DNA of 64,000 nt from positions 11,316 to 75,315 of the forward strand of contig NW_019218627.1 of NCBI RefSeq assembly GCF_002571385.2. Direction: 5' to 3'. The translations under genes and the position numbers were made by a program. Below the pieces are notes generated by a model. That model had not been told where the DNA came from. It ran no database searches and worked only from the letters and a program-made list of their open reading frames with translations. Numbering within the stretch: position 1 is the stretch's first letter; each line of letters starts with the position of its first letter. Shown in pieces: positions 2,709 through 58,924 of this stretch. The stretch comes from Stylophora pistillata. Lineage: Eukaryota.

Positions 2709-5700
2709 ATGGAAACAAAAAATAGCGACTCACTCCATGAGAAAATTAAAAAACAGAAAGAAAAAATTTGCGGAAATAGCCCGAATCTATCTAAAGAAGC
2801 TGCCGATTACCTGGAAGCAGCGCTTGGAAGATTACATTCCCTTACTTTCAAAGATTCAAAACAAAAGGACACATTTTTTGAAAATGTTCAATGTCTTCAA
2901 GGATATCACATAATTGAAATCTTCAATACATGGGTGGCCTCTCATCTTCAAGATTCACTGAAAGATCCTTCCAAATCGACGAGAGAGATAATGGGAATTT
3001 TCGAAATTTGTTCTCAATTTTGTTATTCCTCCGACATGTCCAGTGGAGTATCCTTTGAGGTCTTTATCAGGACTATTAAGTTTTGCTTTCCCTCTGATTC
3101 AAAGAAGTGCCACTTATCAACAAGAATAGTTGTGATGCTACTGGAACTTGTGCAGATTCTCCAAGAAGGAAAACTCATTTTTCCTGTTTCAGATTCACAG
3201 AAGAAAACGTACTGCATTAACAGTGCTACGAATCTCTTCAATGACTTCATTGTAATTTTAGAGGCGAGGGACTATTGCGCGGAAGATATTGTTGATATAA
3301 TCTCCCAAGCATCTAAGTTTGCTCGGGCAGATATCAAACGCAAGTCTTCTGAATTGCAATCGGAACTGATGAAGACGTTATTTCCTGGCTTACAGTAACC
3401 TTTTGATGACTTGATTCCCGCAATTTACTTCAGAAACTGGGGTGATCTCCTTCAGCTAACGAAAGAAGGAGATGTTGCATTCATTCTTCGTCTAGCCAGT
3501 GAAGATCCACTTTATACGCCTCTACCAGGTACCATATCTCCTCTTTGGTATATGGTTAATGTCTTACGGGAACTTAAAAGAAAAGGAGAGCAAGTCGATC
3601 TTGGCTATGAGGAAGAACGGCTTGATGTTTTCTTTAGACACATGTACGATGTTTTCAGAGAAGGCTACGAGATGACAGCTACCTCATTGAAAATCTTCTC
3701 ATGGAAAAAGGTTAACGATACCGACTTAGCAGATGTTTATAAAATTTTCTTCCTCAGAAAATGCGAAGAGCCCACACAATTTCCAACCCACAGTGTACAA
3801 TGCTTCCAATCAGTGGGAGAATTGCTGCATAAATTTCCAGACGGATGTCTAGTCGCAAGAATTCTCCAATTTTGGATTGACACTTTCCCAAATGATCTGG
3901 AAAAAGCAGAGCTTATGAAATTGTTAGATCTCTTCACAGGCCTCTTTATCAAACAATCAGCTGAAAGTGTAAACGGCTTAAAAGAAAAAGCTGACCGGCT
4001 CTTACATTATATTATGAAAATAATCAAGGCGTCCTTAATCGTTTCTTGGCCTAAAGCACCTGAATTTTTGGAGGTATTCAAGCGATCAGCATATTCTTTT
4101 TTGGACTGGATTTCACAACAAGTTGACCTCAGCGAATATGCCAAAGAAAACACGATTGCCCTTTTCGTGCGATGCTTCGATCGTATGGAAAGGTGCGAAC
4201 CATTTTCTTGTCAGCTCATCAAATCCTTGTGCCTATGCAAAGGCTTGTCCCTCGAATACAGGGAAACTTTTCTTGAGGAAATTATAAACTTTTCCACGCA
4301 CCTCGACGAGAACGAAAAAGATCTCATTCTGGCTTTTGTATCTAAAGTATCTACGTCTAGTCAGACCCTTGATAGCAATCAGGAAGTCTTCTCTGAACTC
4401 TCAGAGACATTAAATCGATTAATTTTCAAAAACAAACGTCTGACAAAACAAACTAGATCTAAAACATTTCAGCTGATCATGAATCTAGCCAAAGCTCCAC
4501 TTCTGAGCGTGAAGACTGATAATGTAGTTCGCTTAATAAGGCATTCAAGGAATTTACCAGATGGTCTATCATGCTGCGAAGATGTTTTAAGATTAGCGAC
4601 CTCAGTTGCTGCAATTGTCAAAGAAAGAGCTGAGGAATATTTTGAGATTCTATTCTCGGCAGTTTTTGAGACTTTGAACGGATCGAAACCCCTCTGTGAG
4701 GTCTTTAGCATCCAGCATCAGAATATGACTAAGCTACATATTGATGAGGGTTTCTCAATCGATGTAATGATCATTTGGAATGTTGCCGTGGCTGGACTCT
4801 TGGCACTGGGTATATTTGATAAGATGGTTGACCTGCCTTGTTGCTTGCCAGTTTTTGCAAGAGCAAGGGGATTTAACTCCCCATTTGAAGCTTTGTTGCT
4901 GTATTTTGAGTTAAGGCGGGTGTTTTCTGGGGTCATCTTGTTGTTGAGAGACTTTGCCAAGAGAGGTAGTAGGGAACCATTACCTAAGTCCCCTGTTGGA
5001 AACTTTGTTGATTCTCTGAAAATTATCGTACAGTCTGACATCTCAACACCTGAGGCGAAGCTTAGGTTGATCCAGAAACTCTATCTCCTAGTGCAAGGAA
5101 AGCCAAGGCTCCTGATTGGAAACGTCTTACATTGCGCACTTATGAATGTCATTCCACTTTGTAGCGGAACCTGCCGATCGGACCAAAAAAAGGATTTGGA
5201 CTTTGATCACATTGCAACCATAATTGAACGTCCTGGAATGGTGGAGCTACTTGGAAACATTCCTTCGACACCATCAAAATCAATGTGTTCTATTCTTTGT
5301 CAAACGATTTCCAAAAGGCTATCCACGCAAGATGTAAGCAAGATCTACGATTGTTTTGCTTCCTTCAGACATGCACGAAAAGTATTCCTAGAACATATGT
5401 TAACGCTGTTGGAATCAACCATCAAGGTTTCCAGCTCAGGCACTGTGGTAGTTCGTCTCCTAAAGGAAGCAAAAGAGCTACTCTGTCAGTTTGACCCAAA
5501 ACTGATGCCTCTCGCTATTTCTATCTTTTCTTACCTTGTTGAAAACAACGTAACCCCAAAGGAAAGAGCAGCCTTTTTTGCGGTGGTTTTTCCCGGGTGG
5601 CAAACTACTTGCGACTCAGGCGTGTGTGTGAGGTACGAAATTCCTCACATTCTTTGGAAAACCTACGAAAGTACTAGAAACGGAAAAGGAACATCTGAGG

Positions 5701-8700
5701 TCATGGATAATATCCAAGAACTTATTGAACGCGTCAAAGACCTGGAAACACGAGTAGTGAAAGAGGCTTTGGGAAATCCAGCTACCTTTAATCGTGGCAG
5801 CATAGTTCGCTGCGACTTAGAGAGACTCGCTCTCCACTCCCCTTTATCATGCGAAGATGTTGCCTTATGTTTCCACCTCTCTTGTTGTTACCCAAGTGTC
5901 CACCGACTGACCTGTTTTAACCCGTATGCAGGTTCTGGTTCCCAAATGCAAGATGACCGCTTAATACCTAAACCTACTCAACGCAACGAATCCAAGAGCA
6001 GAGACGATATAAGTAGCCGTAAACAGTTCAGTAATGCCACCCACCATTCATTTGAACAAGCCTCTATGGCTTCAAAAACACTAGCATCTCTCTTGACTCC
6101 AGGTACGATTGCAGAGAAAATGATGGTACAGTTGAGACGTCTCCGAGGTGATGATATAAATCTCCATGATACCACAGTTAAGCTTTGGAATTCTCTTTTT
6201 GCAAACGAAGGCTTAGCCTGTCCAATTGAAGCCTGCAAACCTTCAGACGATTCTTCCGCCTGTGATAATGTGGTAAGGCTTTTCCTCTCCTGCTTGGAAA
6301 AGGCACCATACTTTGAAGTTGTACCTACCTGGTTCGACAATGACATCCGCAAGGGACTAAGTCAGCATCACGTCCTTCAATGTGCCGAAGTCGTATATGA
6401 GTCATGTGGATGGAAAGCCCAAAACCTGGACAAGGAGGGGCATTTTAAGATTCAGGAAGCAATAGCTTTATTATTACAAGAGATCCTTAGAAGTAGCACT
6501 CTATTTCCCAGAATGCCTCCTTTCCTTAATGCAACGTCCTGTTTTTGTGATCTTAGACCCCAACTAGAGTCCCTCCTTTGCATTCTTCAAAATTGCCTGC
6601 CGTTTCAGATAACCTTTGATCTTCTAAAACTCGCCATGGTAGACTTTCAAGCCGCCACTACGATTGCAACGATTGCTTCTTATTGGCCATGCAAAAATGA
6701 AGCAGCAAAGTTGCTGGAGGAAGTTAAAAGGCGCTTCGAAAAAGAGGGAGAGCGTATACACCCACTATGCAAAGACTTTGTTTGGTCAATGTTAGAAGCG
6801 GGTGGCCGGGTTTACAAAGATAGCTCTCAAGTTCTGATAGACAAACTTGAATGGCTGAACGATTTCCATGGCCTTGATGTTCTTAATTACGGCCTTGATC
6901 GGCTTCCAAATTGGCGTAGATTAATGACGGCGGACGGTGTTCCTGCCCACGTGATTGACAACTGGTGTGTGTTTTTTCTCTTCACACCCAGGGAAAACAT
7001 TTCGTTGCGCGATGTTGATGCAGTTCTTGACATCAGTCCCACATCCCTGCAGCTAGTTGCAAATGCCTCTGAAAGTATTAAAAGATGCTTATTTTCAGAA
7101 AATGTCTTTCAAGGAACGCATTCGCAAGAAGAGATATCCTCTAACTCTTTGATCAAGGAATGCTTACGACTGGCCAGATTCCTAAGCGAATTAATCCACA
7201 TATTGAAGGTCCGAGTGCCTGAAAAAACTGCCATCGATGATATTGTTGAGGAAATTGTGGTTCAAGCTTGTAACAGGCTTTGCATGAGTCATATGGAGAA
7301 AATCAAGAAGGAAAAAGATAAAGTCATGAATGCAAAAGACGAAACCGAAGAGACAGAGGACAAAAAACAAAAGGAAGAAAAAAAAACCAAGAAGACAGAG
7401 AACAAATCCAAAAAGGGAGGAAACGTAAGCACAAAGAAAAAAGAGCAAACCAAAACGATAGTAGGCAATTCTAAAATGAAAGAGGACAAATTCAAAGAGA
7501 TAGAAGCCAGAACCGCAGACACAGTAGAAAATGATGGAGAAGAGATGAGAGACAAACGCAAAAAGACAGAGGATGAAAAAGATGAAACAGATTACGAGCC
7601 CAAAATTGCAAAAGATAAAATCAAAAGTAACAATCCCTACAGAATCCTCCACCGGACGCTTAAGGCCCTTTTCAATGAAATGTTTGCCAAACAATCCACA
7701 ATCACCGATAACCAATCCAGTTTACAAAACTGTGGTGAAGGTGCGATGGATTTTGTCTTGAAAGGTTCAACCTTGCCACAGCATCATCTTCCAAGTGAAG
7801 TTTATGAGTCGATGCTGGTATTAATGCGACGCTGGTTGTCGGGTATCGCCAACAAACCATCCCTTGCTTCCAACGCTATGAAGATTGTTCAGTCACTTTT
7901 ATCATTCTCTTGCGAGAAAGATCATTCCCAGATAGAGAAGTTACAAGACGAGATTCGACTTCAGATACTATCATTTCCAAGAAATCAGCTTCTTCTATCC
8001 CAGTTACAAGCAGCAGGCTACAATCAAGGAAACTCCGTGAACTCCCAGGACTTGTGGGCCTCGCCTTCTCTCGAGCTTTCTTGTTTCTTCAGCAAGTGTG
8101 AGTTTCAAAGTGACAAACGTTATGAGACGAAACTAACTGATGTCCTCAGGCTTCATTGGATGCAATGGAAGGACCTACTTTTCAAGCAGAATATTCATTC
8201 TGTAACGATCGATGACCACGAAGTGCCTGTGAAGGACCTCTTTGAGACTCACGCTTCGCGAGTTGAAATGGAGAAGCAGGTGGCAGCTGCAAGGAAAAAA
8301 GTCGGGCAGATTGAGTCCGAGAACGTTAGCAGACATGTGAGCCAGCTAGTTCGTGAAGAGCAGAAGCACCGTGACAGAGTTACTAAATTATACAAGAAAG
8401 TAAGTAAAACGATATACACTAATTTCGTTGACATTGCAGACATTACAGAGCGTGACTTACAAGAAAGTGAGAGCGTACTCATGCATCGTATGCAATACTG
8501 CCTTTACCAGTGGTTAAAAATTCAAACTGTCACATTTACGGAAGAACGATTATGACAACTTGGACAAGCTGGCAGGGTTTGATAGTCCGTAAACTTCCCA
8601 TTAGAACCTGTTAATAGCCCTTCGAAATATTGTGAAGTGATGACGATGATGAAGATTATTATTATAACTCAAATTATCTACTACAACACATAAATCATTT

Positions 8701-23000: not shown

Positions 23001-23817
23001 AACCGGCTCTTCTTACGCGGTGTTAACTATGTCAGTACTTATGCATAACGATTTTGTTTTACCCTTGACTTGTACAAAGGCGTTTCCTCAAGAGGAACTT
23101 TGTTTAGAATGAAACAAGAAATTACAGCGACTTCAATCTAGCCTAAGACTGTGCTAAAAAATCACTTCAGTGGAGTCGCCTTGCTACCTGTTGCTCACCA
23201 GTTGTGCAAATATCACTGTTGGACAATATGCTCTCTAGTTCATCTTGATGTAGCTCCAAAAACTGTGATGTTTCCGCGACTTTGACAAAATTTTCACACA
23301 GAAATCTGTGGCACCGCTGATGAAGCTTTTCTTGTCCATGAGTAAGCGAAATTTCCTGCACTTTCAAACAATTGTCAGGCGTTAAAAAACTCGCAAGAAC
23401 GTAGGAACATTCCTCGATCAAGCTTTGTAGCTTGAAGAAGATTGCAGCCTTGAAAATGTCGATAGCGTTGCCGATGTTGATAAAAATTCGTCCTCCATAC
23501 ATGTAACCAAGTAATGCCTCCATAGTGGAACGCTCGATCTCTTGAGGAAGATCCACGTGCTTAATGAATCGACCGCTTTCGTTGTCTATGAACAGGGATC
23601 GGAAATACGGACTCGCAACGCCGAGGATATTACGATGGCACGAAAATTTCAAACTTCCAATTCGCAGCGTCACATCGCAGAGAATCGCCTCTCTGCGTAA
23701 GAATTGAAAGTACTCGATGATAGAATCTTGAAAATTTCTATCCACAAATAAATACGTTTGGTCCTGTTTGATTCTATTAATGTCTGTCTGGATATCTCCA
23801 ACGTGTTGGGAAGGCAT
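20081..23817 (-). CDS. Kelch-like BTB-BACK-Kelch protein (probable CUL3 adaptor), 601 aa
   Basis: Exons 23817-23188, 22379-22006, 21160-20952, 20849-20487, 20310-20081 (1806 nt, in frame); BTB (LCDVTL..FSCHRNILGVASPYFRSLF), BACK (EQQVFDSLVRW..LLQHVRL), Kelch repeats (IYVIGG..ERYDP...W). Confidence 0.92.
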
Positions 23818-24718
23818 ACTGAACTCTTGAGTCTGATTCCTTTATTTTATATTTTACTAGTGCCTGGTTAGATACATTAAATGCTTACAAGTATTATTTG
23901 CATACCAAGAAAGCTGCGTGAGTTTATTTATGCTCATTTAAGAGTCGTATTTGTGGTGTAAACTAACAGGTACCACTGGTATATTTATGTATGCAAATAA
24001 TGACGGCGGATTTTGTCCGTGCATTTTTGAAATGTAATCGGGCTAACACTCACCTCTTAAACTGAAAACAGACAAAAAAAAATTCAACAGACTTTGGAGG
24101 GAGGGGAGGAACTGAAGAGCGACGGCGAAACAATGACCGGGAAAATATGATTATCACTTTCCATGTTTTGTTGCCAGCGCATGTGTCTGGGTAATGGGCC
24201 GGTCAATATTAATCCCCTGGGCAAGTCGGAGGATATTGGTTGTATCACGATAAAATTTACCTGATTCCCCCATAAGGTTTTGTAATATTGTCATGATCCC
24301 CCTCATAGGCAGTTATAATCAGCAGTCAATTTTTCATGTTCCCCTTTCATATCCTGTTGGATATATATGACTGATCCCCTGTTATTCCCCTGAAAACCAT
24401 GTGATCCCTACCAAAAAAATTCCTCTTCTTAATGAGTTCATTATTTTCCCTGGAAAATTGGAGAGGTGTCTCACACATTTTGACGCAGACTAGATGGTTC
24501 AATGGGTAGTGATCACTTCGATTTTCTCTAACAGCTGGACACCATGATGACTACTTGCGTGATTGTTTACATGCGTGATTGTCTACATGCGTGGTTACAA
24601 AGGCGATAATTAGTCTGGTCTCCTGTCGTCGTGATCCGAACGGACGATCGCGTGAGTTTGGACACTCACCAAGCTCTCGTTTCTACAGAACGAACATAAA
24701 ATCCACTAATTTGTGACA

Positions 24719-25432
24719 ATGTCTGACGAACCGGAAACAACCACCTCTGATTTTTGGAAGGGACTTTGGAAGAACGGTGACATTGGCTGGCATCGTAACG
24801 AAGTGAATGCATTTCTGATCAAGTATTTTGACGAACTCACCGGTGGACGATCGAATCTTCGCTTCTTCGTGCCCCTTAGTGGAAAATCAGTAGATATGTT
24901 GTGGTTGGCCGACAAAGGGCATACAGTGGTTGGAGTAGAGCTCGCCAAGCAAGCAAACGAGGATTTCTTCGCAGAAAATAACCTGACTTTCACGGTGGAA
25001 TCAGTTGAAATGTCTGCAGTCAGTGAGCCTGTGGAAGTATACAAGTGTACGGAGAAGAAGATCACGATCTTTTGCTGTGACCTCTTCGCTATGACAGAAA
25101 ATGATGTTGGTGGGAGATTCGACGCCATCTGGGATCGTGGATCCTTGTCTGCCATCGCTCCTTCGTTTGGTGACAGGGGTAAACGGTATACAACAAAAAT
25201 GCATTCACTTCTGGCTAGTGGTGGAAATTACCTGCTAGAAAGCTGTTATTATGAAGTTGACCGCGGGATGAACCCTCCAGCCAGCATTCCAGACGAGCAG
25301 ATAAATGAAATGTATGAAGAACACTTCACTATCAAAAAGCTGGAAGTGAACAAAATTCAGCCAAACCTCGACATAAAATTGTCCTTTGCTCTCGACATGA
25401 AACATTACCTGTTCAAGCCAAAAGTAAACTAA
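24719..25432 (+). CDS. TPMT: Thiopurine S-methyltransferase-like SAM-dependent methyltransferase, single exon, 237 aa
   Basis: FWKGLWKNGDIGWH, RFFVPLSGKSVDMLWLADKGHTVVGVELA, CCDLF, FDAIWDRGSLSAI and NPP are TPMT-family motifs; first ATG at 24719. Confidence 0.9.
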   Translation: MSDEPETTTSDFWKGLWKNGDIGWHRNEVNAFLIKYFDELTGGRSNLRFFVPLSGKSVDMLWLADKGHTVVGVELAKQANEDFFAENNLTFTVESVEMSAVSEPVEVYKCTEKKITIFCCDLFAMTENDVGGRFDAIWDRGSLSAIAPSFGDRGKRYTTKMHSLLASGGNYLLESCYYEVDRGMNPPASIPDEQINEMYEEHFTIKKLEVNKIQPNLDIKLSFALDMKHYLFKPKVN

Positions 25433-43100: not shown

Positions 43101-46100
43101 GGTCACCACTCTCTCCTTCAGGTGCATACAGTAGAGGACTTCATTGCTAAGTTGTCCTGTCATGGCGACACCAGCATGAAAGTTGTATCCATATTTGGTA
43201 ACACAGGTGATGGAAAATCACACACCCTTAACCATGTCTTCTTCTGTGGCAAAGAAGTATTTGGGACTTCACCATCTCAGCTCTCCTGCACAGTTGGTGT
43301 TTGGGCTGCCTATGATGAGGGTAGTCGGGTGGTTGTCTTGGATACCGAAGGGCTATTGGGTATGTCAGGCAATCAGAACCAACGTACAAGGCTATTACTG
43401 AAGGTCCTAGCAATATCTGACATTATCATCTATAGGACAAGAGCTGAAAGGCTCCACACAGACATGTTTACTTTCTTGGGGGATGCATCAGATGCCTATC
43501 TAAAACATTTCACCAAGGAGCTGAAAGATGCTACAGAACGATGCCACATGGATGTGCCCCTATGCAATCTTGGTCCAGCTGTGATCATCTTTCATGAGAC
43601 ACAGCATACCCATTTACTAGGAGTGTCAGAGAATGAGGCAAATCCATCAGGTTTGGATAATTTTGCAGCTTTGAAATCAGTTGATAAATACTGTAATTTC
43701 TCTAATAAGTGCCTACAGGTGCCAGGGCTTGACACTGACAGACCAGCCATTACTAGCCACAGACTAGCAGAAATTCAGTTTTCAATTGGCAAGTGGTTTT
43801 CAATTTTCACCAGCCAGTTTGGCCAGTAAACAAACTGAAATTGTTGTAACATCTAAGTTGTCATTAACCACTTGGCTAGTAAGTTAAAAAGTTAGTTTCG
43901 AGCCCTGGGTGCTTCAAATTTTTGCTAAATTAAATTAAGTGGAGGGGCACTTATGGAAGAAGGATGGAGGTTAATAGAGGGTGGTGCTTATTTTACTCTC
44001 CTGTACAGATTCCACTATAGCTGAAGGTTAAAAAGTTATAGATAAAAGGGGCACAGTAGAAATAGGTTTTCCATCATGTATCCCTATTATTTAAGGTAGT
44101 GAGAGTTTGAGAGAGGGGCCCCGGGGACAGTAATGTTTATTATAGAGCACTTAATTATTCAAGGAAATACAGTATGTCAATTGATTTTGAATTTCTTTTT
44201 GAATCTGAAGTAGTTCTAAAGATTGAATTATACTCCTGATTTTATATTCTGCCACTCAAAAATTCTTTTTTTTTTTAATTTTCCTTCTGTAACAGAAAAT
44301 CTGAAGAGTCCTGATGAGATTTTAAAGGAGAGATTTGCAAATGTAGGAAGAGTTCCTCATGCATTTAGTTCTATCAAGTACCTAGGAACAAGGACAGAGA
44401 CTCCACCAACAAACTTCAAGGGATTGAAGCAAGCTGTAAAGGGATGTTTAGGGGACAGCTCTGTGCGCTCGTCACGATCACCTACTGTCATTTATAAAGC
44501 TTTGATGGTAATTTCTCTAGATTAGTTAACAGTCTTTGACAGCTAATCACACCCAAATCACACATTAAGGTCACAAGAATTAAGAAAATGATCTTAAAGT
44601 AAAGGAGCTCCTGATTATTAACAAATTCTCCTTGTTAGCACCTTTGGAAACTTGTAGTGAATAGTATGAAGAATATGCATGCTGATGTCAGGATGTAAAG
44701 AATTCAACGATACAGGTCAATTGCACTCGTTAGTCTGGGAAAAACTAAGACCACATTAACTGTGGTCGCTTACATGAAAATGACCAACAAACCAAATTGA
44801 ATCCAGTTGAAATTCTTTGTCATATTCTTTGCCAGCATGTGCTTGGGTCCAGTTAGCAGTTACTAGACAGAACTGAATTTATTTGGAATTGTTGATCATT
44901 AGATTCTCATCATAGGTCAGGGCTTTAAATTAATTTACACTAACTTTTCAATTTACTAGCCAAGTGGCTAGTGACAACTTAGATACTACGATAATTTCAG
45001 TTTGTTTACTAGCCAAACTCACTGGTGGAAATAAAAAACCGCCAGACAAAACTGAATTTCTTCTAGTCTGTGGCTAGTTAGCTACCATTAGTGTCAATGG
45101 AGCTCTGCAGGTTTAAAGTCTGATCTGTTTAAGTAACCAGGTGATAATGCTGGAATTGCTGAAGGCCTAATGCAGGTGAAATACCTATGGCCTTATAGCT
45201 GAGGGAAGTGTTTCTTGTACAGGTATACAATTAGTAGGCTGAATGTTAAAGTTAACTGAGAGAAGTGCAATGAAAAAAGGTTCTCAGAAATTATTATTTA
45301 AACTAACTAGACCTAAAGGAGGTAAGGGCCAGTAAGTAAAGGAGTGTTAAACGCAGTGAGTAATGAGTGTTATATTCAATAACATGTACCTGTTTGTGTC
45401 CTTCCTCTGAAATCTGTAAAGGGACTAATTATTAGATGGGGAGGGGGGAAGGGTTGGTCAATAACTGTAATTATGATCATTGTGTTACTAATTTTTTTAC
45501 ATCCAAGTTTCTCTCCTTTCCTTTTCATCAGCTCCTAAATGAGAAGTTCAGTGGGGACATTGAAAGAACAATACCAAACACTTTCCCTGACGAATATTTC
45601 ACTTGCCAGGCAGCGTGCCTCTCATGCCAGTAAGCACAAGGTTTATGGTTACCACCTTATACAACAAAATTTGTTGTTACTAATGACTGTAATTTTTGTC
45701 AATGGTGTAGGCTAACTGTACATGTCCAGCAAAGAGTAGTGGTGCTGTCTGTGACAGTACCTGACACGATCATGCATTGCAAAGGTCGACATCATCAGAG
45801 TCTACTGATTCAGAAGATTAATAATGTCAGTTGAATGTTGTAACCCCTAACCCCCTAATAGAGTGGCAAGCGTCTGATATCTCCTAATGATACCACAGCT
45901 GAGTTGAACAATCATGAAGGTCATGGGAATAAATGAAAAGATTGCCAACTTGATTAAGAAGCTCTTGATCCTCAAATAAATTGTTCTTGTTAGTACATAA
46001 TTTGACTGGAAATGTACAGAGAACAGTATATGGAATATGTAGTACATACTTAGTATACACCAAATGCAAATAGGGCATCCAATTTGAGTTGCCATTGTTC

Positions 46101-51559: not shown

Positions 51560-51978
51560 AGAGTAAAGTAAGTATAGCAAGTAGAACTTTATTTAAACAT
51601 GAAACATTGATGAACAGAAAGATGCTCGTTAAAAAAATGTACGTGTATACTAACTAATATAATTAGAAACTATAATATGATAAATGAATAAATAATTTAA
51701 GAAAATATATATCGAAAAAAAAAACAAAAAACAAAAAACATGCTATATGCCCGAAATATACAAGCTAAAAATATTGCAGGCTAAGGACTAATAAAATCTA
51801 TCATTGAAATAACGCAGAAGGCGTGAATCAAGCACAGAAGGTGCATTTGCAATTAACTTCAGTATCCAAATTTAACTTAACTGATTTCTAAAAATAGTAA
51901 TGCTTTTGGCATCCCTGGCATCTTGAGGAAGGCTGTTCCACAGCTGACAACCAATATAAGAGAAGGACCGATGCCCAA
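51560..51978 (-). mobile_element. 5'-truncated CR1/L2-type LINE 3' end inserted in a TTAA-MITE
   Basis: Minus strand encodes GHRSFSYIGCQLWNSLPQDARDAKSITIFRNQLS* (typical ORF2 C-terminal FSY.G..LWNSLP), then a 3' UTR with AATAAA; MITE sequence lies on both sides. Confidence 0.7.
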
Positions 51979-53389
51979 GAAAATGATCAACCTCATGATA
52001 AAAAGAACATTGATTTACTACCGGCCATCTTCTCAAAACTAACATTGAAAGAAATGTATAACGGATGGTAAGGAGAGCTTACACCGCAATCAATTTACAG
52101 GGTGAAAGGTTTTTTCAATACCAGTTTGGTACATGAAACATGTAGGACCTAGTAGGTTCTTTGGACCTTTTGAAATTACTAATCCTGAAAGTGGGAAGAG
52201 GTTATCAGCTAACTTAAGTGTACCATAGTTATAATTATACTTTTAAGACAAATAATACAACAGTTGTGTGAGACATAATAAGTCAAAATAAAATTAATAA
52301 ATCAAATATTTCTCCCCTTGTAAAAAGGTTAAGTACAGTTCGTCTTCCCTGTTGTATTAAGCATTTTTTCCAAGCATACCAGTATTAAAATATTTTTATT
52401 TCTAGGCAGTTTTTTTCAGGCTGTTCTGTGATAAACTTTCTCAAGGATTTTTCCCTAGTTTCCATGCTTTTTCCATTTATACAGTCATATTAAACAACTC
52501 ACAAAAACAGTAATTGGGCCCATTAGATTTGCCCATTAATCTACTGTTCCTACATCTTCCTTGGAATTCAGCTGCTTTGATTTTGTATGCCAAAACGTGG
52601 GGCTGAAATGAGTCCACATTTGTAAACAATTGAAAATATTGAGTTTATACACAGTTATCACTGCTCTCAGAAAAAAAACCTGGCTGAAAAATAGAAATCA
52701 TATGAAAGGTAACATCAGTGCATAAGTCATAGGGCTGTTCCAGCCAGAGCTTATCCAGATGTTATTGGCAAAGAGCAACTAAGATTTTCCCCCAACTTGT
52801 CTCTGACCCTATTGGGTGGGATGCTAATCTATTGCAGGGTTATATCTTTTTACACTTAAAATCAGTATGCAAATTCTCCATACTGTTCTCCATCTGTTTT
52901 CTAGGGTGCTGACAAGGAGAGTTTGTTTAGCTATCATGAGATTCAGGTGATGATCATTTCCTATGATTTGGGTGATCTTAATGTTTGATCCAGGGGTGGT
53001 ATCAGATGTGGAGAAATTAGATGCTTGTCATTCTTAGGGATTAAAGGGTTACACCTCGCCTGCCATAAACAATGGTACACTTTCCAATTAAAGGGAGTGA
53101 TGTTAAAAGCCAAAACAAAAGAAATTATAATGGCCAGTCAGAACAGAAAAAAAATATTGCATCAAGGCAAAGAGATTCCAAAGCTTAACCAAGCAAACTT
53201 CCTGAGGGGTGGGGGTAAGGCTGAAATAGGTGAGTACACACTAGTTGGGAAAGAATTCAGTTTTTCATGTGATTGGTTGGAAATGTGATCCTAAAAACTA
53301 CTTGTGATTGCCACTCAGCTGAAAAATGCAATAAATTGCATACTCGCAGTGTCACTGTCAGTGATGTTTATAACTCTCTTAAATCAATG

Positions 53390-55459
53390 TCAAACTCCAG
53401 GTAACTTGAGCAGTAAACAAGAGTAATTATATAGCACCAGTGAATCATCTTCGCCAACTTCTTTACGAGGATCGCCACAAGCCGTTTTGTAAGAGTTCAT
53501 AAACTGTAGTGCTTCATCCTCTCTGCGCAACTCCTCCAAACAAGCTACCAAGACATAATATGCAAATATCAGTGCTGGAGCTTTAATGGTGTCATTTCGC
53601 TGAATATGGTAACCAAGGTTACCATCCAATGTGATCTCCTCGCTCCGACCATAACCAAGGTATTTCAATACTTTAGAGGCCTCACTACAAGTTATACCTT
53701 GCTTTGCAGCCTCTATAGCTTCATCAAAACGATCATTTCTGTATAAAAACATGCTAAGCTCAACATGATGAGAAGCACTGGTTGGCTGTAACTCCACTGA
53801 TTTTTTCAGCATCATCTCGGCATGGGTTAGAAGCTCCCCATTAGGTTCAGTAACATCATCTTCATATGCTTGTACATGGTAGAAACATCCAGCATCGTGG
53901 AATAGACTGGCTGGAAGATCAATACCATTGGTGGCCTTTGTCAGTGTTGCAATTACCTCTTGATCTGAAAATCCAAGGCTTCTCATGGAAATCAAGCGGC
54001 AAGCAGCTGCTTCAGCATCACCATCACCATTGCGTCTTAGGCATTGAACTATTGAATTGCACAGTAATTCATGGGCATTTGTTTGCTTACCAGTCCCTTT
54101 CAAAATTTGAACTACACACTCAATGTACTCAATCCCTTTCTGAGCTGTTCTGGGATTTTTCATCAAAACTAAGCCAAGATTGTAGAGGTGGTATTTAAGA
54201 AAATCACTCAAAACATTCTTATCTGGGGAGCTGTGGAATTCCTTTAGAAGTGCAAGAAGAGTGCTATATCCAAACTTCTCTGGTGCCTGACTTAAAAGTG
54301 ACTCAATGCATTTTGTAAGTTTAGGGGAGTTTGCTAAAGCTAAGAGAGGCTTCTGCATGATTTGCATCAACTCCTTGGAAATGATTGCACAAGATTCTTT
54401 AGAAATTTCTTTAAGATGATTTCTCTGTATGACAAAGTAATTGGGCAACGTGTAACTCTGTAGACATTTTGTAAGCCTTTCAATTACTCCAAGCACACAG
54501 TGTCCTAGGTTTAAATTGTTCCAGATGTCAGGATCTGCCTCCTCCAAGAACCAGAAGAAGGCACATTTAACCCAGTAGGAAGGTATACGCTCATAATGGA
54601 GATCTTTCACGAGACCTTTTACAACCAGATAGCATTTCCTCTGCACTGGATTCAGATTCTGTGCCAGAACTGTTTCAGCGAAAGAAAATGACAACCTCCA
54701 TTCCAGATGGGAAGCGTCTCCAAACCCTTTTGCAACCGCAGCACAACCTTGATGAAAAATCATCTGCACGATTTCCGGTTGTGGCCAGTTCCGTTTTCTC
54801 TTCGCCCATTCATCAGCAACAGAAGGCCAATTAGGACAACGGAAAGCAAAGACAAGATCCACACTTTCCATGCTGATGCCGGCTTCCTGAACCAGATGCT
54901 CTGTGACTAACAGGGAAGGTCCAGCTGCTTTTGCAACTTCTTGAACTTGGTTCAAGTTCTTCCGAAATACGTCGCAAAATTTAGAGCTTGATACGTAAAC
55001 ACAGTCACCTTTACTTTCTAAAACATCATCGGGTAAACTCCAACGGCAAGCGGTATTGACACGGAGTTTTACGTACCTTGGTTCTTTTGCATTCTCAATA
55101 AAAGCAACAACATCGCTAATTGATTCATCTGCACTGTTTTCTTCCTCATCAGACACGGTAATTTCCTTGATTATAGCTAGTTGTGGCAGAAACATCACGT
55201 CAAGATCTGTTCCATATCGATATCGAAGGCTACTTCCGGCTTCGTTTTCCTCGGCCACTTCCATGCTTAGTAAATACAGTCTTTCCTCTAAACTTCCACT
55301 GCGCTCAATAATAAAACTGGTTTCCCAAGGAAGTATTTTTCGAAGAGCATCTTCAGTTGGTTCAAATTCAAACCGTCCAAAATTTGGACGATGCCAATCT
55401 GAGAAAGTTACCAGGTGGCATAAAAGGCCGAAATGATCGGGTTCGAATTTAGTCGCCAT
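53390..55459 (-). CDS. cGAS-like receptor (Mab-21/cGLR nucleotidyltransferase) with C-terminal TPR-like helical domain, single exon, 689 aa
   Basis: NTase motifs SGS (G55,S56), DLD (D85,D87), VDLV (D201); WPSVADEWAKRKRNWP, EWRLSFSFAE, PSYWVKCAFFWFLE, LPNYFV of the Mab-21 family; TPR-like AEMMLKKSVELQPTSASHHVELSMFLYRNDRFDEAIEAAKQG. Confidence 0.9.
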   Translation of the reverse strand: MATKFEPDHFGLLCHLVTFSDWHRPNFGRFEFEPTEDALRKILPWETSFIIERSGSLEERLYLLSMEVAEENEAGSSLRYRYGTDLDVMFLPQLAIIKEITVSDEEENSADESISDVVAFIENAKEPRYVKLRVNTACRWSLPDDVLESKGDCVYVSSSKFCDVFRKNLNQVQEVAKAAGPSLLVTEHLVQEAGISMESVDLVFAFRCPNWPSVADEWAKRKRNWPQPEIVQMIFHQGCAAVAKGFGDASHLEWRLSFSFAETVLAQNLNPVQRKCYLVVKGLVKDLHYERIPSYWVKCAFFWFLEEADPDIWNNLNLGHCVLGVIERLTKCLQSYTLPNYFVIQRNHLKEISKESCAIISKELMQIMQKPLLALANSPKLTKCIESLLSQAPEKFGYSTLLALLKEFHSSPDKNVLSDFLKYHLYNLGLVLMKNPRTAQKGIEYIECVVQILKGTGKQTNAHELLCNSIVQCLRRNGDGDAEAAACRLISMRSLGFSDQEVIATLTKATNGIDLPASLFHDAGCFYHVQAYEDDVTEPNGELLTHAEMMLKKSVELQPTSASHHVELSMFLYRNDRFDEAIEAAKQGITCSEASKVLKYLGYGRSEEITLDGNLGYHIQRNDTIKAPALIFAYYVLVACLEELRREDEALQFMNSYKTACGDPRKEVGEDDSLVLYNYSCLLLKLPGV

Positions 55460-56067
55460 TGATTATCGTCTTTGACTCAGGATAACTTTGAAAGTCTTCT
55501 CATCCATGTTGAAAGGTTGTTTCAAATTCTCAAAGTCTTCTCCCTAAGGATGGGCCGATATTCGCTACCAGCGATGCCGAGGTCGGATCAAAAAATAACG
55601 ATACTACAGAGGAGAATCGATTCTTTCGATACTGCAAGTGACCTGCGCTTTTTAAATCTCCCTCGACTAACCGCTGATAAATAGCCGAAAAGACTTCGGG
55701 CTCGAGATCGTGCACTGATGTGTGTGGGGTTGCAGCAGTGTACCGATCGCGATCAAGGGTGGTGGTTTCTTCCTTTCCACAGAGCAACATTTCATTGTGA
55801 AATAGACCCAATTTTATTAACTGTAAATGTAAAGTCACTCAACATGCTCTATACAACGGCAACAAAATCACAACTCACAACAATCCGGGCATTAAAAGGA
55901 GATATCTAGAGTGCCTACCAAAGAAAAACATTGTGTGAGAAAAGCACTGAGAAAGGTTAAATAGTTCTAAAGTATGGTATTAAACTTATTACATACAAGT
56001 CTGCCACACTGCCTCAGCTGACGTATTGCCATATCGTCTTGAATTTTTGCCGCTCGTCGGACAACAG

Positions 56068-56069
<2 letters not shown>

Positions 56070-56123
<54 letters not shown>
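56070..56123. repeat. (AAT)n microsatellite
   Basis: About 18 AAT units; similar tracts at 19511-19545 and 58925-58975. Confidence 0.9.
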
Positions 56124-56127
<4 letters not shown>

Positions 56128-58924
56128 GATTTTTATTTCACTATAGTTAACGGGCTACGCTCATGCGCCCCCGTCATACTATTCTTACTGTATATAGCAT
56201 ACAAAAGTTGTAAACTGCTGCATAATAATAATAATAATTATAATAATGATAATATTGATAATAAATAATAAATAATAATAGTAATAAATAATAATAAGCA
56301 ATAAATAATATTAATAACATTAATTAATAATATTAATCTCTGCGACAATAATAATAATAATAATTTGAGCTATGGGGTCAAAATAATTCACAAACAGTTT
56401 TCTCTAACGCCTAGGAAGGAAATAATGAAAAAAAAAACATCCATTTGCGTTCCGTATAGTTAGCGCTCGACGTTTTGCATTGTCCGCTGCCTTAATTATT
56501 GTCTTCAAAATATGGACAAAAAGCGAGAAACAAAAAGCGTATGAAGATTTGGTGTAATTTCAGCAGTTCTAAAATAACTAGACGCTCGAGGAGCGTTCAC
56601 TCTGGCTTCTTTTATAGCCTTGGCATCCACACCAAACACGAGTACAATTATAACATAATTTGTAAATTGGTGCGATCAAATTCAATTGCGCGAGTGTACT
56701 TCAATTTTCCATTGTGCACGCTGGCGAGGTCAGCAAACAAATGCTTCGCGAAAAAAAAAAATTTCTCTCGAGTGACTTCAGCATTTTTCATAAAACAAAA
56801 AAAACAAAAAACAAAAAAAAACGGGAAAAACTTCCCCAAAAAAGTTAAACTAGACATGGCGCAACAAGCGAACAAACCGATGAAGATCTGCCTACTTTTT
56901 CTTTGGGAATGGATTTTTTAACTCCCGAGAAAGAACCCAGAGAAAAGGAAAGCAAAACAACCTGTGGTTTCATCTCATTTCGCAACTCTAACTTCATTTC
57001 AACGCATGGATTCACCTGTCAGTTTTTTACCAGTCTGAGACAAGGTCATTAAAGCATAGCGAAACACTTTTCCGAAACAAAATAAACAATGCATTGAAGC
57101 GTGGGAGAGGGAATTTCTGATCTTTATNNNNNNNNNNNNNNNNNNNNNNNNNNNNNNNNNNNNNNNNNNNNNNNNNNNNNNNNNNNNNNNNNNNNNNNNN
57201 NNNNNNNNNNNNNNNNNNNNNNNNNNNNNNNNNNNNNNNNNNNNNNNNNNNNNNNNNNNNNNNNNNNNNNNNNNNNNNNNNNNNNNNNNNNNNNNNNNNN
57301 NNNNNNNNNNNNNNNNNNNNNNNNNNNNNNNNNNNNNNNNNNNNNNNNNNNNNNNNNNNNNNNNNNNNNNNNNNNNNNNNNNNNNNNNNNNNNNNNNNNN
57401 NNNNNNNNNNNNNNNNNNNNNNNNNNNNNNNNNNNNNNNNNNNNNNNNNNNNNNNNNNNNNNNNNNNNNNNNNNNNNNNNNNNNNNNNNNNNNNNNNNNN
57501 NNNNNNNNNNNNNNNNNNNNNNNNNNNNNNNNNNNNNNNNNNNNNNNNNNNNNNNNNNNNNNNNNNNNNNNNNNNNNNNNNNNNNNNNNNNNNNNNNNNN
57601 NNNNNNNNNNNNNNNNNNNNNNNNNNNNNNNNNNNNNNNNNNNNNNNNNNNNNNNNNNNNNNNNNNNNNNNNNNNNNNNNNNNNNNNNNNNNNNNNNNNN
57701 NNNNNNNNNNNNNNNNNNNNNNNNNNNNNNNNNNNNNNNNNNNNNNNNNNNNNNNNNNNNNNNNNNNNNNNNNNNNNNNNNNNNNNNNNNNNNNNNNNNN
57801 NNNNNNNNNNNNNNNNNNNNNNNNNNNNNNNNNNNNNNNNNNNNNNNNNNNNNNNNNNNNNNNNNNNNNNNNNNNNNNNNNNNNNNNNNNNNNNNNNNNN
57901 NNNNNNNNNNNNNNNNNNNNNNNNNNNNNNNNNNNNNNNNNNNNNNNNNNNNNNNNNNNNNNNGAAAACGGAGCAACAAAATGGCGGAGCTGAACGATCC
58001 AAAATTTGATTTTCTTTTTTCAATTTTATAGGCTTCCCCTTTTTAATCCTTTAACTCCCTTTGGTGATCAGGACAGAATTTCTCCTTAGAATATCAATAC
58101 AGTAACAAGCAGGCAAGTGCTGAGAATAAAGAAAATATTAATTAGGGCTGATGGAATAACAAATCCTCCAAACTGACATCGTAAGAATTATAGAGAAGAC
58201 AGTCAGGAGAATAACTAATGAGATGTTGGGAGTGAAAGCGTTACGAAAGCGACTTTTTAACTGCATTAGCATTATTAATTGGTCATGAATAACACTTTAC
58301 TGATGTCACTTGTGTTGTTTTCGTCTTTTGTGCACGCTGTACGCGATCAATGCGACGCTCGTATTAGGTCTTGAGAAGGGTCACGAAAACTAGGAGCAAT
58401 TGAGATAATTGAAAATGAAATAATCATTAAAGAAAATAAATCCCTTGTTTAATAACAATAATAATCCTTTATTTGCCATAATCACTAAAAATTTACAAAA
58501 ATCATGTTAAAAGGCTTAAAATGTCTGATAAAAATCTAAGAAAATCTATTGGATACACGCTTCGGTTAGTAACGATGATGACAACAACAATAATAATCAT
58601 AATAATTCGGTTCTCTAGGATCAGACTCGTATCAGACCCAAACTAACTTTGATAACAAAAACGACCTACATATAAAAATCGCGAAAGCAACTACTAGTTC
58701 GTATTGAAAGAATTTCAGAAAACGTGCATTGAAATTATCCTTATAAAAGTAAATTACATTAAAAAAAGTACATGAGAAGGGAAATGACTCTTACTCTAAA
58801 AAGTGTAAAAACAAATTTTAAAAATGTCTAGCCTATATTTGCCATAGCATTGTCAATTAAAAAATCTGTATTGAATGTCTCAAATGATCTTCTTCTTCTT
58901 CTTCTTCTTCTTTTCTCTTCTTCT

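What the first reader, a model, noticed from the sequence alone, without database searches (positions are those of the whole stretch)
53390..55459. Catalytically intact cGAS-like receptor fused to a TPR-like C-terminal domain
Seen: complete GS...DxD...D metal-binding set (G55/S56, D85, D87, D201), a long acidic insertion after the DxD strand (SDEEENSADES), no obvious cGAS zinc thumb, and ~290 aa of helical/TPR-like sequence after the Mab-21 lobe, all in one exon. Known: cGLRs are animal pattern-recognition enzymes that make cyclic dinucleotides for STING and are expanded in corals. Inference: the acidic insertion and TPR module suggest activation by a protein or other non-dsDNA ligand, or TPR autoinhibition, i.e. 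an uncharacterised sensing mode with a possibly unusual second messenger.
Basis: partly seen in the sequence, partly recalled or inferred. Interest (0 to 1): 0.75.

Follow-up and report, generated by a model that had tools for sequence, protein, structure and literature searches.

The report
Coral cGAS-like enzyme with TPR tail
This is a real, expressed, intron-free coral gene for a cGAS-like immune signalling enzyme with an intact active site joined to a peptide-binding-type TPR domain; such fusions are already listed in the literature but none has a known trigger.

Summary
Window 53390-55459 (minus strand) is a 689-aa open frame of Stylophora pistillata, filed in GenBank as PFX14071.1 'Protein mab-21'.

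- **Enzyme half:** Pfam finds both Mab-21 domains. A confident AlphaFold model (pLDDT 86) matches Cv-cGLR1, Sp-cGLR1, mouse cGAS and MB21D2 at Z 25-26.
- **Active site:** G55/S56, D85, D87 and D201 are invariant in 13 of 13 family members, from corals to bivalves.
- **Not like cGAS:** there is no zinc thumb, and the enzyme domain is acidic (pI 5.3).
- **C-terminal half:** residues 379-510 are helical. Residues 514-684 form three TPR repeats plus a cap, closest to Hop/Sti1 domains (Z 12-13). This half is as conserved as the enzyme.
- **Gene model:** RNA contigs from four studies run unspliced across the gene.

The family is one group shared by stony corals and bivalves. The acidic loop SDEEENSADES is coral-only, variable and predicted flexible, so it is probably not the core of the mechanism.

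Most likely this is a nucleotide-signal synthase controlled through its TPR module by a protein or peptide, not by nucleic acid. That is inferred, not shown. Mab21-TPR fusions are already noted in print (Li 2023; Kaur 2021), so it is a new member of a known kind. The scan noted other cGLRs in this genome, but not this locus.

The parts
53390..55459 (-). Complete coding sequence, 689 aa plus stop codon, single exon
   Evidence: ORF list. RNA contigs lie colinear with no joints. An in-frame stop lies two codons upstream of M1.
54665..55459 (-). Nucleotidyltransferase core (aa 1-265) of the Mab-21/cGLR fold
   Evidence: Pfam PF03281 at aa 127-265. The model range 8-374 matches Cv-cGLR1 at Z 26.3 and Sp-cGLR1 at Z 26.0.
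55292..55297 (-). G55-S56 activation-loop motif
   Evidence: Invariant in 13 of 13 rows of A2. It lies at the junction of strand 49-54 and helix 55-59 in the model.
55199..55207 (-). D85-L86-D87, the first two catalytic acidic residues
   Evidence: Invariant in 13 of 13 rows. They sit at the start of strand 86-92 and align with D/E-x-D/E of the S. pistillata paralogues.
54857..54859 (-). D201, the third catalytic acidic residue
   Evidence: Invariant in 13 of 13 rows. 'svDlvfAl' aligns with cGAS 'SVDITLAL' in the PDB profile search.
55121..55153 (-). Acidic loop SDEEENSADES (aa 103-113) inside a coral-specific insertion
   Evidence: In corals the stretch has 4-9 D/E in 20-29 residues; in bivalve kin it is 13-15 residues with 2-4 D/E. 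pLDDT is below 50 at aa 107-110.
54344..54664 (-). Mab-21 C-terminal helical lobe (aa 266-372)
   Evidence: Pfam PF20266 at aa 274-364, E 6.8e-14.
53921..54343 (-). Helical region aa 373-513 (the last short helix of the Mab-21 lobe, then seven helices from 379 to 510) linking the enzyme to the TPR module
   Evidence: Model secondary structure, pLDDT mostly 80-92. It aligns colinearly with the bivalve kin.
53393..53920 (-). TPR module aa 514-689: three helix pairs plus a capping helix
   Evidence: VIA: Sti1 TPR2B Z 13.1 (124 of 125 aligned, rmsd 2.4); HOP TPR1 Z 12.3 (115 of 115, rmsd 1.8). Profile match to consensus TPR proteins, E 4e-15. Matches to true TPR proteins.
53576..53677 (-). Conserved insertion aa 595-628 between the second and third TPR, holding the motif SEEITLDGNLGYH
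   Evidence: S606 E607 E608 T610 L611 D612 G613 N614 L615 G616 H618 are invariant in 10 of 10 coral rows. D612 is invariant in 13 of 13.
55460..55691 (-). Unspliced 5' leader (138-232 nt) with a 14-codon in-frame upstream ORF at 55463-55507
   Evidence: Contig ends at 55597, 55623 and 55691. Translation.
51754..53389 (-). 3' untranslated region. It is shown down to 52600; the rest is extrapolated from contig lengths
   Evidence: Contigs run colinear to 52600 and continue 353-846 letters beyond the laid stretch.

Best explanation
The gene encodes a cytosolic cGAS-like receptor (Mab-21 fold nucleotidyltransferase). It most likely makes a cyclic di- or oligonucleotide signal for the coral's STING-type receptors. 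Its activity or location is probably set through the C-terminal helical and three-repeat TPR module, by binding a protein or short peptide rather than by nucleic acid binding on the enzyme's back face. Shown here: the gene is real, intron-free and transcribed. The fold is that of cGLRs. The GS/DxD/D set and the nucleotide-contacting motifs (WRLSFS..E, SY..K) are kept. The enzyme is acidic and has no zinc thumb. The tail is a TPR solenoid as conserved as the enzyme. Enzyme and tail have travelled together in one group found in stony corals and bivalves. Inferred, not shown: catalysis, the product, the kind of ligand, and whether the TPR activates, inhibits or only tethers.
For: - **Fold:** Z 26.3, 26.0, 25.6 and 25.1 to Cv-cGLR1, Sp-cGLR1, mouse cGAS and MB21D2, with bacterial CD-NTases at Z 14-16.5. 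Foldseek E 1e-12 to 1e-10 for the same set. The model has pLDDT 86.3 and pTM 0.81.
- **Catalytic set:** invariant in 13 of 13 rows down to 23-29% identity. W254, S257, F258, E262, S294, Y295 and K298 are also invariant there and align with cGAS 'WRLSFSHIEKE' and 'SSYHVK'.
- **Charge:** pI 5.28 for the enzyme domain, and 5.0-6.0 in all 13 members. The Li et al. preprint gives pI >8.5 for nucleic-acid sensors and proposes non-nucleic-acid ligands for acidic cGLRs (passages).
- **Tail:** TPR by sequence and by structure. Its identity to orthologues equals or exceeds that of the enzyme, e.g. P0009 at 53/50/55/65% over the four regions.
- **Shared history:** on the enzyme region alone the coral clade (9 rows) and the bivalve clade (3 rows) are sisters at 94/94, apart from the other S. 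pistillata paralogues. Mytilus P0012 finds the coral proteins at E 2.5e-84 over 92% of its length.
- **Expression:** 20 of 24 listed runs hold half or more of the words. 4 of 4 runs laid carry colinear contigs that stop 138-232 nt upstream of the ATG.
- **Constraint:** of the 14 in-frame differences among those runs, 8 are synonymous and 6 are not. All 6 lie in variable loops or outside the invariant positions.
Against: - No biochemical data exist for this protein, as far as I could see.
- The spacings GS-28-DxD and DxD-113-D fall outside the published cGLR search pattern.
- Human MB21D2, a top structural match, has an intact site but no known product or ligand (passage).
- One family relative (P0155) has lost the first acidic residue, so non-catalytic roles occur in the wider family.
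- Z 12-13 for helical repeats is within the range the tool warns may be a common arrangement.
- I could not inspect model coordinates, so neither active-site geometry, surface charge nor enzyme-TPR contacts were measured.
- RNA evidence is from assembled contigs, which cannot give strand or level.
Confidence: 0.55

Rival explanations
1. It is a non-signalling Mab-21 scaffold or pseudo-enzyme, like MAB21L1 or MiD49/51. It would bind a nucleotide as a cofactor and use the TPR module to assemble a chaperone or adaptor complex, without making a second messenger.
For: MiD49 (Z 21.7) and MAB21L1 (Z 20.5) are also strong structural matches. MB21D2 has no known product (passage). Hop/Sti1-type TPR domains, the best C-terminal matches, are chaperone adaptors. 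P0155 in the wider family lacks a full triad.
Against: All five catalytic residues are invariant in 13 of 13 members across corals and bivalves at 23-29% overall identity. That is hard to explain without catalysis. The closest sequence match in the PDB is the proven enzyme Sp-cGLR1 (E 3.4e-16).
Confidence: 0.2
2. It is an ordinary nucleic-acid-sensing cGLR. The TPR tail acts only downstream, in oligomerisation or docking to a signalling partner, and not in ligand sensing.
For: All cGLRs with known ligands sense dsDNA or dsRNA (Li et al. preprint, passages). The nearest solved relative, Sp-cGLR1, senses dsRNA.
Against: The enzyme domain has a net charge of -13 and pI 5.28. The N-terminal helices are net -3. 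There is no zinc thumb. The published nucleic-acid sensors have pI >8.5.
Confidence: 0.12
3. The TPR module is an intramolecular brake. It holds an acidic segment of the same chain (the coral acidic loop, or the conserved SEEITLD loop inside the TPR) and keeps the enzyme off until a competing ligand displaces it.
For: The best structural matches bind acidic EEVD-type tails (the function is recalled; the matches are). The protein has an acidic, flexible loop next to the active-site strands and an invariant SEE..LD loop within the TPR. A pTM of 0.81 for a 689-aa two-module chain suggests a fixed arrangement.
Against: The acidic loop is absent from the bivalve kin. The position aligned to a consensus TPR Asn is an invariant Glu, E567, which does not favour an acidic ligand.
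Confidence: 0.1

Closest known systems
Sp-cGLR1 of Stylophora pistillata (PDB 8GJY), dsRNA-activated 3'3'-cUA synthase
   Same: It comes from the same genome and has the same fold (Z 26.0, 317 residues aligned). It is the best PDB sequence match (E 3.4e-16) and has the same catalytic motif pattern.
   Different: About 20% identity. Sp-cGLR1 has no C-terminal domain (376-aa chain) and is described as a dsRNA sensor of the basic class. The window protein is acidic, 689 aa, and carries the helical and TPR tail.
Human MB21D2 (PDB 7LT1), orphan cGLR
   Same: It is the top Foldseek match (E 1.2e-12; Z 25.1). It has an intact site and no known nucleic-acid ligand (passages).
   Different: 18% identity. 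MB21D2 has no TPR module; the alignment ends at model residue 390. Orthology was not tested.
TPR-fused cGLRs listed in the Li et al. 2023 preprint (Fig 1C, Table S2), and the oyster Mab21/cGAS-then-TPR proteins of Kaur et al. 2021
   Same: The same domain order: a cGLR/Mab-21 enzyme followed by TPRs, in cnidarians and bivalves (passages).
   Different: Those are census entries without function. The oyster example carries HEPN, Ig, DED and TRADD-N domains in front, which this protein lacks. The preprint's S. pistillata figure annotates only ankyrin and death-domain fusions. I could not see the tables to learn whether this protein is listed.
Acidic cGLRs Pd-cGLR (Pocillopora damicornis) and Sp-cGLR2 (S. 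pistillata), 2'3'-cGAMP synthases with unknown ligand
   Same: A low pI and a proposed non-nucleic-acid ligand. The P. damicornis orthologue of the window protein has pI 5.06, near the 5.0 quoted for Pd-cGLR.
   Different: Identity with either is unknown, because accession numbers are only in supplements that I could not open. pI does not discriminate: 18 of 21 S. pistillata paralogue ORFs have pI below 6.3.
Hop/Sti1 three-repeat TPR domains (PDB 1ELW, 3UPV, 4GCN)
   Same: Three TPR hairpins plus a capping helix superpose over the whole target domain (115 of 115 at rmsd 1.8; 124 of 125 at rmsd 2.4).
   Different: 11-16% identity. The window protein has a 34-residue conserved insertion between repeats 2 and 3. 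Conservation of the carboxylate clamp was not established.

Membership tests
cGAS-like receptors (criteria of the Li et al. 2023 preprint) | Predicted structural homology to cGAS (bilobed Mab-21 NTase fold) | tested here: met
   Z 25.6 to mouse cGAS and Z 26.3/26.0 to Cv-/Sp-cGLR1 over model residues 8-379. Foldseek probability 1.00.
cGAS-like receptors (criteria of the Li et al. 2023 preprint) | G[S/G] activation-loop motif | tested here: met
   G55-S56, invariant in 13 of 13. The preceding residue is S, not the Q/T of the search pattern.
cGAS-like receptors (criteria of the Li et al. 2023 preprint) | [E/D]h[E/D] ... [E/D] catalytic triad present | tested here: met
   D85, D87 and D201 are invariant in 13 of 13. 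D201 aligns with the cGAS SVD motif.
cGAS-like receptors (criteria of the Li et al. 2023 preprint) | Motif spacing: GS X8-20 DhDh, and X50-90 to the third acidic residue | tested here: not met
   28 residues (aa 57-84) lie between GS and DxD. Between the DxD strand and the third acid lie 111 residues counted from V88 to V200, or 113 from D87 to D201. The pattern is quoted. The excess is due to two loop insertions, at aa 63-84 and ~97-118.
cGAS-like receptors (criteria of the Li et al. 2023 preprint) | [quoted passage not shown] | not testable with these tools
   Needs recombinant protein and NTP assays.
cGAS proper (dsDNA sensor) | Zinc-thumb insertion and a basic DNA-binding surface | tested here: not met
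   No H-x5-CC-x6-C motif and no CC pair (the motif is recalled). The cGAS Cys-rich segment is unmatched in the profile alignment. pI is 5.28, against >8.5 for nucleic-acid sensors.
Tetratricopeptide repeat (TPR) domains | Pfam TPR model above its gathering score | tested here: not met
   The best hit is TPR_17 at 18.4 bits against a cut-off of 24.4. TPR families reach E<=0.01 in up to 6 of 13 family members. They are above the cut-off in paralogue L007 (TPR_2 at 32.8 vs 27).
Tetratricopeptide repeat (TPR) domains | Significant sequence similarity to bona fide TPR proteins | tested here: met
   The orthologue profile hits consensus TPR proteins at E 4.1e-15 and 4.9e-11. The C-terminal query hits many proteins. 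Of the 19 whose Pfam content I checked, 8 are TPR proteins and 7 are Mab-21 kin.
Tetratricopeptide repeat (TPR) domains | Helix-turn-helix solenoid of 34-residue repeats in three dimensions | tested here: met
   Model residues 507-688 match whole 3-TPR domains at Z 12.3-13.1 and rmsd 1.8-2.6. The tool warns that Z below about 13 can be a common helical arrangement.
Hop/Sti1-type carboxylate-clamp TPR | Conserved clamp of Lys/Asn/Arg residues that grips a C-terminal EEVD peptide | tested here: inconclusive
   Only repeat 2 could be placed on the TPR consensus. There a consensus Asn position holds the invariant E567. The clamp positions are recalled from memory, not from a call. No residue-level structural alignment was available.

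The most novel reading that the evidence does not exclude
This is a protein-sensing cGLR. A Hop-like three-repeat TPR module, inherited together with the enzyme since before corals and bivalves diverged, reads a short peptide or protein tail from a pathogen or from a stressed host chaperone system. It converts that event into a nucleotide second messenger. That would be an animal counterpart of protein-triggered bacterial nucleotide signalling, and the first cGLR with a non-nucleic-acid trigger and a defined sensor domain.
Probability: 0.25. Interest if true: 0.8.

Novelty: new member of a known kind. Interest (0 to 1): 0.45.

Why it matters
Most animal cGLRs are orphan enzymes with unknown triggers, and the field has only nucleic-acid ligands in hand. 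This protein gives a concrete, conserved handle for ligand hunting:
- a separate, well-folded TPR module that can be used as bait;
- an acidic enzyme domain that argues against nucleic acid as the ligand;
- orthologues in two phyla for comparison;
- an intron-free, expressed gene that is easy to clone.

If the TPR proves to be the sensor, cGLR signalling would extend to protein or peptide cues in corals, where immunity and symbiosis breakdown are of practical interest.

Tried and rejected
- **First model.** The first AlphaFold run, on the 10 close orthologues (A1), was unusable for the enzyme half (pLDDT 49). Adding bivalve kin and S. pistillata paralogues (A3, 25 rows) fixed it.
- **Widening the family.** Searching with the A2 profile through the search for homologous proteins returned only the same 9 proteins.
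- **Other long paralogues.** I tested whether the other ~600-860-aa Mab-21 paralogues of this genome share the tail. Only L007 does (phmmer E 1.1e-9, profile E 2.1e-31). The rest score E >= 0.08 and have no Pfam TPR. So 'long tail' is not one family here.
- **GenBank two-exon model.** The upstream exon of PFX14071.1 (~55993-56032) is not joined to the ORF in any of the 4 runs laid. The continuation of the small contig there is not in the window. The 21 N-terminal residues of the single-exon reading are conserved in the orthologues, so I prefer the single-exon model. That form is also in NCBI.
- **Literature searches.** Accession numbers PFX14071, XP_027054222, A0A2B4R8V1 and XP_058973302 appear in no held main text. 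The searches 'cGLR'+'tetratricopeptide', 'cGLR'+'TPR'+'Mab21', 'cGAS-like receptors'+coral+STING+Mab21 and Mab21/bivalve/cGAS/TPR found no functional study of a TPR-cGLR.
- **Papers I could not read.** The journal version of Li et al. is not held under the DOI I recalled. Tables S1-S4 may list this protein, its Pocillopora orthologue, or show that one of them is Sp-cGLR2 or Pd-cGLR.
- **Papers I did read.** Of Li et al. (PMC9980059) I saw only passages. Of Kaur et al. (PMC8195603) I saw only passages. Other papers I saw only as search listings.
- **Not measured.** Model coordinates are not exposed, so I measured no distances, electrostatics or domain contacts. The carboxylate-clamp question stays open.
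- **Neighbourhood.** Neighbouring genes (BTB-BACK, TPMT-like, a weak AIG1 hit) show no functional link.
- **Recalled, not from a call.** Human cGAS residue roles, the zinc-thumb motif and the Hop clamp.
- **N runs.** Left as they are.
Full report
**What is there.**
- On the minus strand, 53390-55459 is a 689-aa open frame starting with ATG. An in-frame TAA lies two codons before M1, so the frame cannot extend upstream in an unspliced RNA.
- Pfam finds the Mab-21 nucleotidyltransferase domain (aa 127-265, E 3.3e-14) and the Mab-21 C-terminal domain (aa 274-364, E 6.8e-14), both above their cut-offs.
- Several TPR models match around aa 547-593, all below their cut-offs. The best is TPR_17, at 18.4 against 24.4 bits.

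**Organism and gene model.**
- The protein is 100% identical over 97% of its length to GenBank PFX14071.1, 'Protein mab-21' of Stylophora pistillata, 682 aa.
- That model replaces the first 21 residues with a short upstream exon. The 689-aa single-exon form is also on record at NCBI.
- The eight orthologues found (55-91% identity, 686-704 aa) all start with the conserved MAT..FGLLCQLVTFSEWH of the single-exon reading.
- The 91% cluster includes named Pocillopora verrucosa and P. damicornis proteins, both 'uncharacterized'.

**Expression.**
- 20 of 24 listed runs, from 11 studies, hold at least half of the sampled words of 53000-56200. Five of them are on record as poly(A) RNA-seq.
- I laid four runs from four studies: X7 and X12 (recorded poly(A) RNA), and X1 and X2 (guessed RNA).
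- In three of them (X7, X1, X2) a single contig covers the ORF colinearly with no gap. In X12 three contigs cover it piecewise. No run shows a joint.
- The contigs end at 55597, 55623 and 55691, that is 138-232 nt upstream of the ATG. There is no or almost no coverage at 55744-55874.
- They run through the stop codon to 52600 and continue 353-846 letters beyond the laid stretch.
- That pattern fits an unspliced mRNA with a long 3' UTR, not stray DNA. Contigs cannot, however, give strand or expression level.
- The small contigs over the GenBank upstream exon are not joined to the ORF, and their continuation is not in the window.
- The leader holds a 14-codon in-frame upstream ORF.

**Enzyme half.**
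- By sequence, the best solved relatives are Sp-cGLR1 (8GJY, E 3.4e-16), MB21D2 (E 9.1e-13) and cGAS (about 1e-6) (titles).
A 25-row alignment gave pLDDT 86.3 and pTM 0.81.
- Model residues 8-379 match these structures:

| Structure | Z | Detail |
|---|---|---|
| Cv-cGLR1 | 26.3 | 313 aligned, rmsd 3.2 |
| Sp-cGLR1 | 26.0 | |
| mouse cGAS | 25.6 | |
| MB21D2 | 25.1 | |
| beetle cGLR | 23.4 | |
| bacterial CD-NTases | 14-16.5 | |

- G55-S56 sits between a strand and a helix, D85/D87 open strand 86-92, and D201 lies on strand 200-208. This is the order expected for this fold.
- In the profile search, 'svDlvfAl' aligns with cGAS 'SVDITLAL', 'WRlSFs.AEke' with 'WRLSFSHIEKE', and 'sSYhlKt' with 'SSYHVKT'.
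- The Cys-rich cGAS segment has no counterpart, and the protein holds no zinc-thumb-like motif.
- G55, S56, D85, D87 and D201 are invariant in 10 of 10 coral rows. They are also invariant in 13 of 13 rows when four relatives of 23-29% identity are added.
- The enzyme domain is acidic: pI 5.28, net charge -13, and pI 5.0-6.0 in all 13 members.

**Two loop insertions.**
- These make the motif spacing unusual. There are 28 residues between GS and DxD. There are 111 residues between V88 and V200, or 113 between D87 and D201.
- The search pattern of the Li et al. preprint allows X8-20 and X50-90. Other S. pistillata paralogues also have long first spacers.
- The second insertion carries the acidic run. 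It is always acid-rich in corals (4-9 D/E in 20-29 residues) but variable in sequence.
- In the bivalve kin it is 13-15 residues with 2-4 D/E. In the model pLDDT is below 50 at aa 107-110.
- I therefore do not see it as the conserved control element.

**C-terminal half.**
- Both models make it all-helical: seven helices from 379 to 510, then pairs 514-531/541-557, 562-574/578-594 and 629-643/647-661, and a last helix at 673-683.
- Residues 507-688 match whole three-repeat TPR domains:

| TPR domain | Z | Aligned | rmsd |
|---|---|---|---|
| Sti1 TPR2B | 13.1 | 124 of 125 | 2.4 |
| C. elegans STI-1 | 12.7 | | |
| HOP TPR1 | 12.3 | 115 of 115 | 1.8 |
| OM64 | 12.7 | | |

- The tool warns that such Z values can arise from common helical arrangements, so sequence evidence matters.
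- The orthologue profile hits consensus TPR proteins at E 4.1e-15.
- A search of 1.84 billion representatives with aa 375-689 gave 230 proteins at E <= 0.001. I checked 19 of them in Pfam: 7 are Mab-21 proteins, 8 are TPR proteins, 1 is an ankyrin protein, 1 is a kinase-WD40 protein and 2 have no family.
- TPR families reach E <= 0.01 in up to 6 of 13 family members.
- A 34-residue insertion between repeats 2 and 3 carries an invariant SEEITLDGNLGYH motif in corals, and D612 is invariant in all 13.
- The tail is as conserved as the enzyme. For P0009, identity is 53, 50, 55 and 65% over the NTase, Mab-21_C, helical and TPR regions.

**Distribution and history.**
- The colinear distant relatives are bivalve proteins: Mytilus (728 aa), Ruditapes (708 aa) and Mya (742 aa). 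Mytilus P0012 finds the coral proteins back at E 2.5e-84 over 92% of its length.
- In a tree of the enzyme region alone, the 9 coral rows (100/100) and 3 bivalve rows (99/98) are sisters at 94/94, apart from the other S. pistillata paralogues.
- A second pair, L007 with P0105, stands at 97/95, and the rest is unresolved. All 25 rows of A3 were used.
- The genome has at least 37 Mab-21 matches, and this gene is single-copy.
- Of 21 paralogue open frames, only L007 shares the tail. All 10 of the long ones I scanned have both Mab-21 domains, but only L007 has a Pfam TPR.
- Among the four runs laid, the ORF shows 14 differences: 8 synonymous and 6 not (aa 67, 73, 79, 114, 645, 667). None touches an invariant position.

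**How it most likely works.**
- The sequence shows an enzyme built to catalyse nucleotidyl transfer as cGLRs do, with an acidic surface unsuited to nucleic acid, rigidly joined to a peptide-binding type of repeat domain.
- I infer a synthase of a cyclic nucleotide signal whose activity or placement is set by a protein or peptide bound by the TPR module.
- The rivals are a non-catalytic scaffold, a standard nucleic-acid sensor with a docking tail, and an intramolecular brake. They are weighed in their own sections.

**What is known.**
- Passages of the Li et al. preprint state several things:
  - 87% of cGLRs have no extra domain, while some carry TPR or ankyrin modules.
  - S. pistillata has 42 cGLRs, three of them fused to ankyrin or death domains.
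  - Acidic cGLRs such as Pd-cGLR and Sp-cGLR2 may sense non-nucleic-acid ligands.
- Kaur et al. 2021 describe oyster proteins with a Mab-21/cGAS domain followed by TPRs.
- I found no functional study of such a fusion.
- Earlier notes of this scan concern other cGLRs of this genome, one of them Sp-cGLR1, and none concerns this locus.

**Verdict.** This is a new member of a known kind, of moderate interest as a tractable orphan cGLR.

Noticed in passing
window 3411-8555 (+), with 2709-3398 (+) just before it: A 1714-aa open frame with no Pfam match. The protein atlas gives only weak, mixed look-alikes among large helical-repeat proteins. What it is remains unexplained.
   Followed up: partly
window 55463-55507 (-): A 14-codon upstream ORF (MDEKTFKVILSQRR) lies in frame with the main ATG and one codon before it, inside the transcribed leader. 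It may damp translation.
   Followed up: partly
window 52857-52893: A ~35-nt element inside the 3' UTR occurs in very many other RNA contigs, with summed depth in the thousands against about 40-67 for the gene. It is probably a piece of a dispersed repeat.
   Followed up: no
window ~55993-56032 (-): The upstream exon of GenBank model PFX14071.1 is transcribed at a low level but is not joined to the ORF in any of the 4 runs. The continuation of its contig is not in the window.
   Followed up: partly
window 24713-25432 (+): A thiopurine S-methyltransferase-like open frame, 239 aa, Pfam TPMT E 6.6e-47.
   Followed up: no
window 23167-23817 (-): An open frame with BTB and BACK domains, probably an exon of a Kelch-like gene.
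   Followed up: no
window 43122-43829 (+): A weak AIG1/GIMAP-like match, E 3.4e-4, below the Pfam cut-off.
   Followed up: no
L007 (G000:C234:103866-107441), ORF 1147-3045 (+): This is the only other S. pistillata Mab-21 gene with the same kind of TPR tail (profile E 2.1e-31). Its TPR_2 hit is above the Pfam cut-off. It groups with P0105, not with the window gene.
   Followed up: partly
P0155 and P0026 (relatives from the representative library): P0155 keeps GS but has S-G-E in place of D-x-D, so it is a likely pseudo-enzyme. P0026 (1466 aa) has two Mab-21 units followed by the TPR tail.
   Followed up: no
L002, L003, L004, L006, L008, L010 (S. pistillata paralogues): Several intron-free Mab-21 paralogues of 670-860 aa carry long extra regions that match no Pfam family and are unrelated to this TPR tail.
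   Followed up: partly
window ~56068-56100: A (TTA)n microsatellite upstream of the gene.
   Followed up: no
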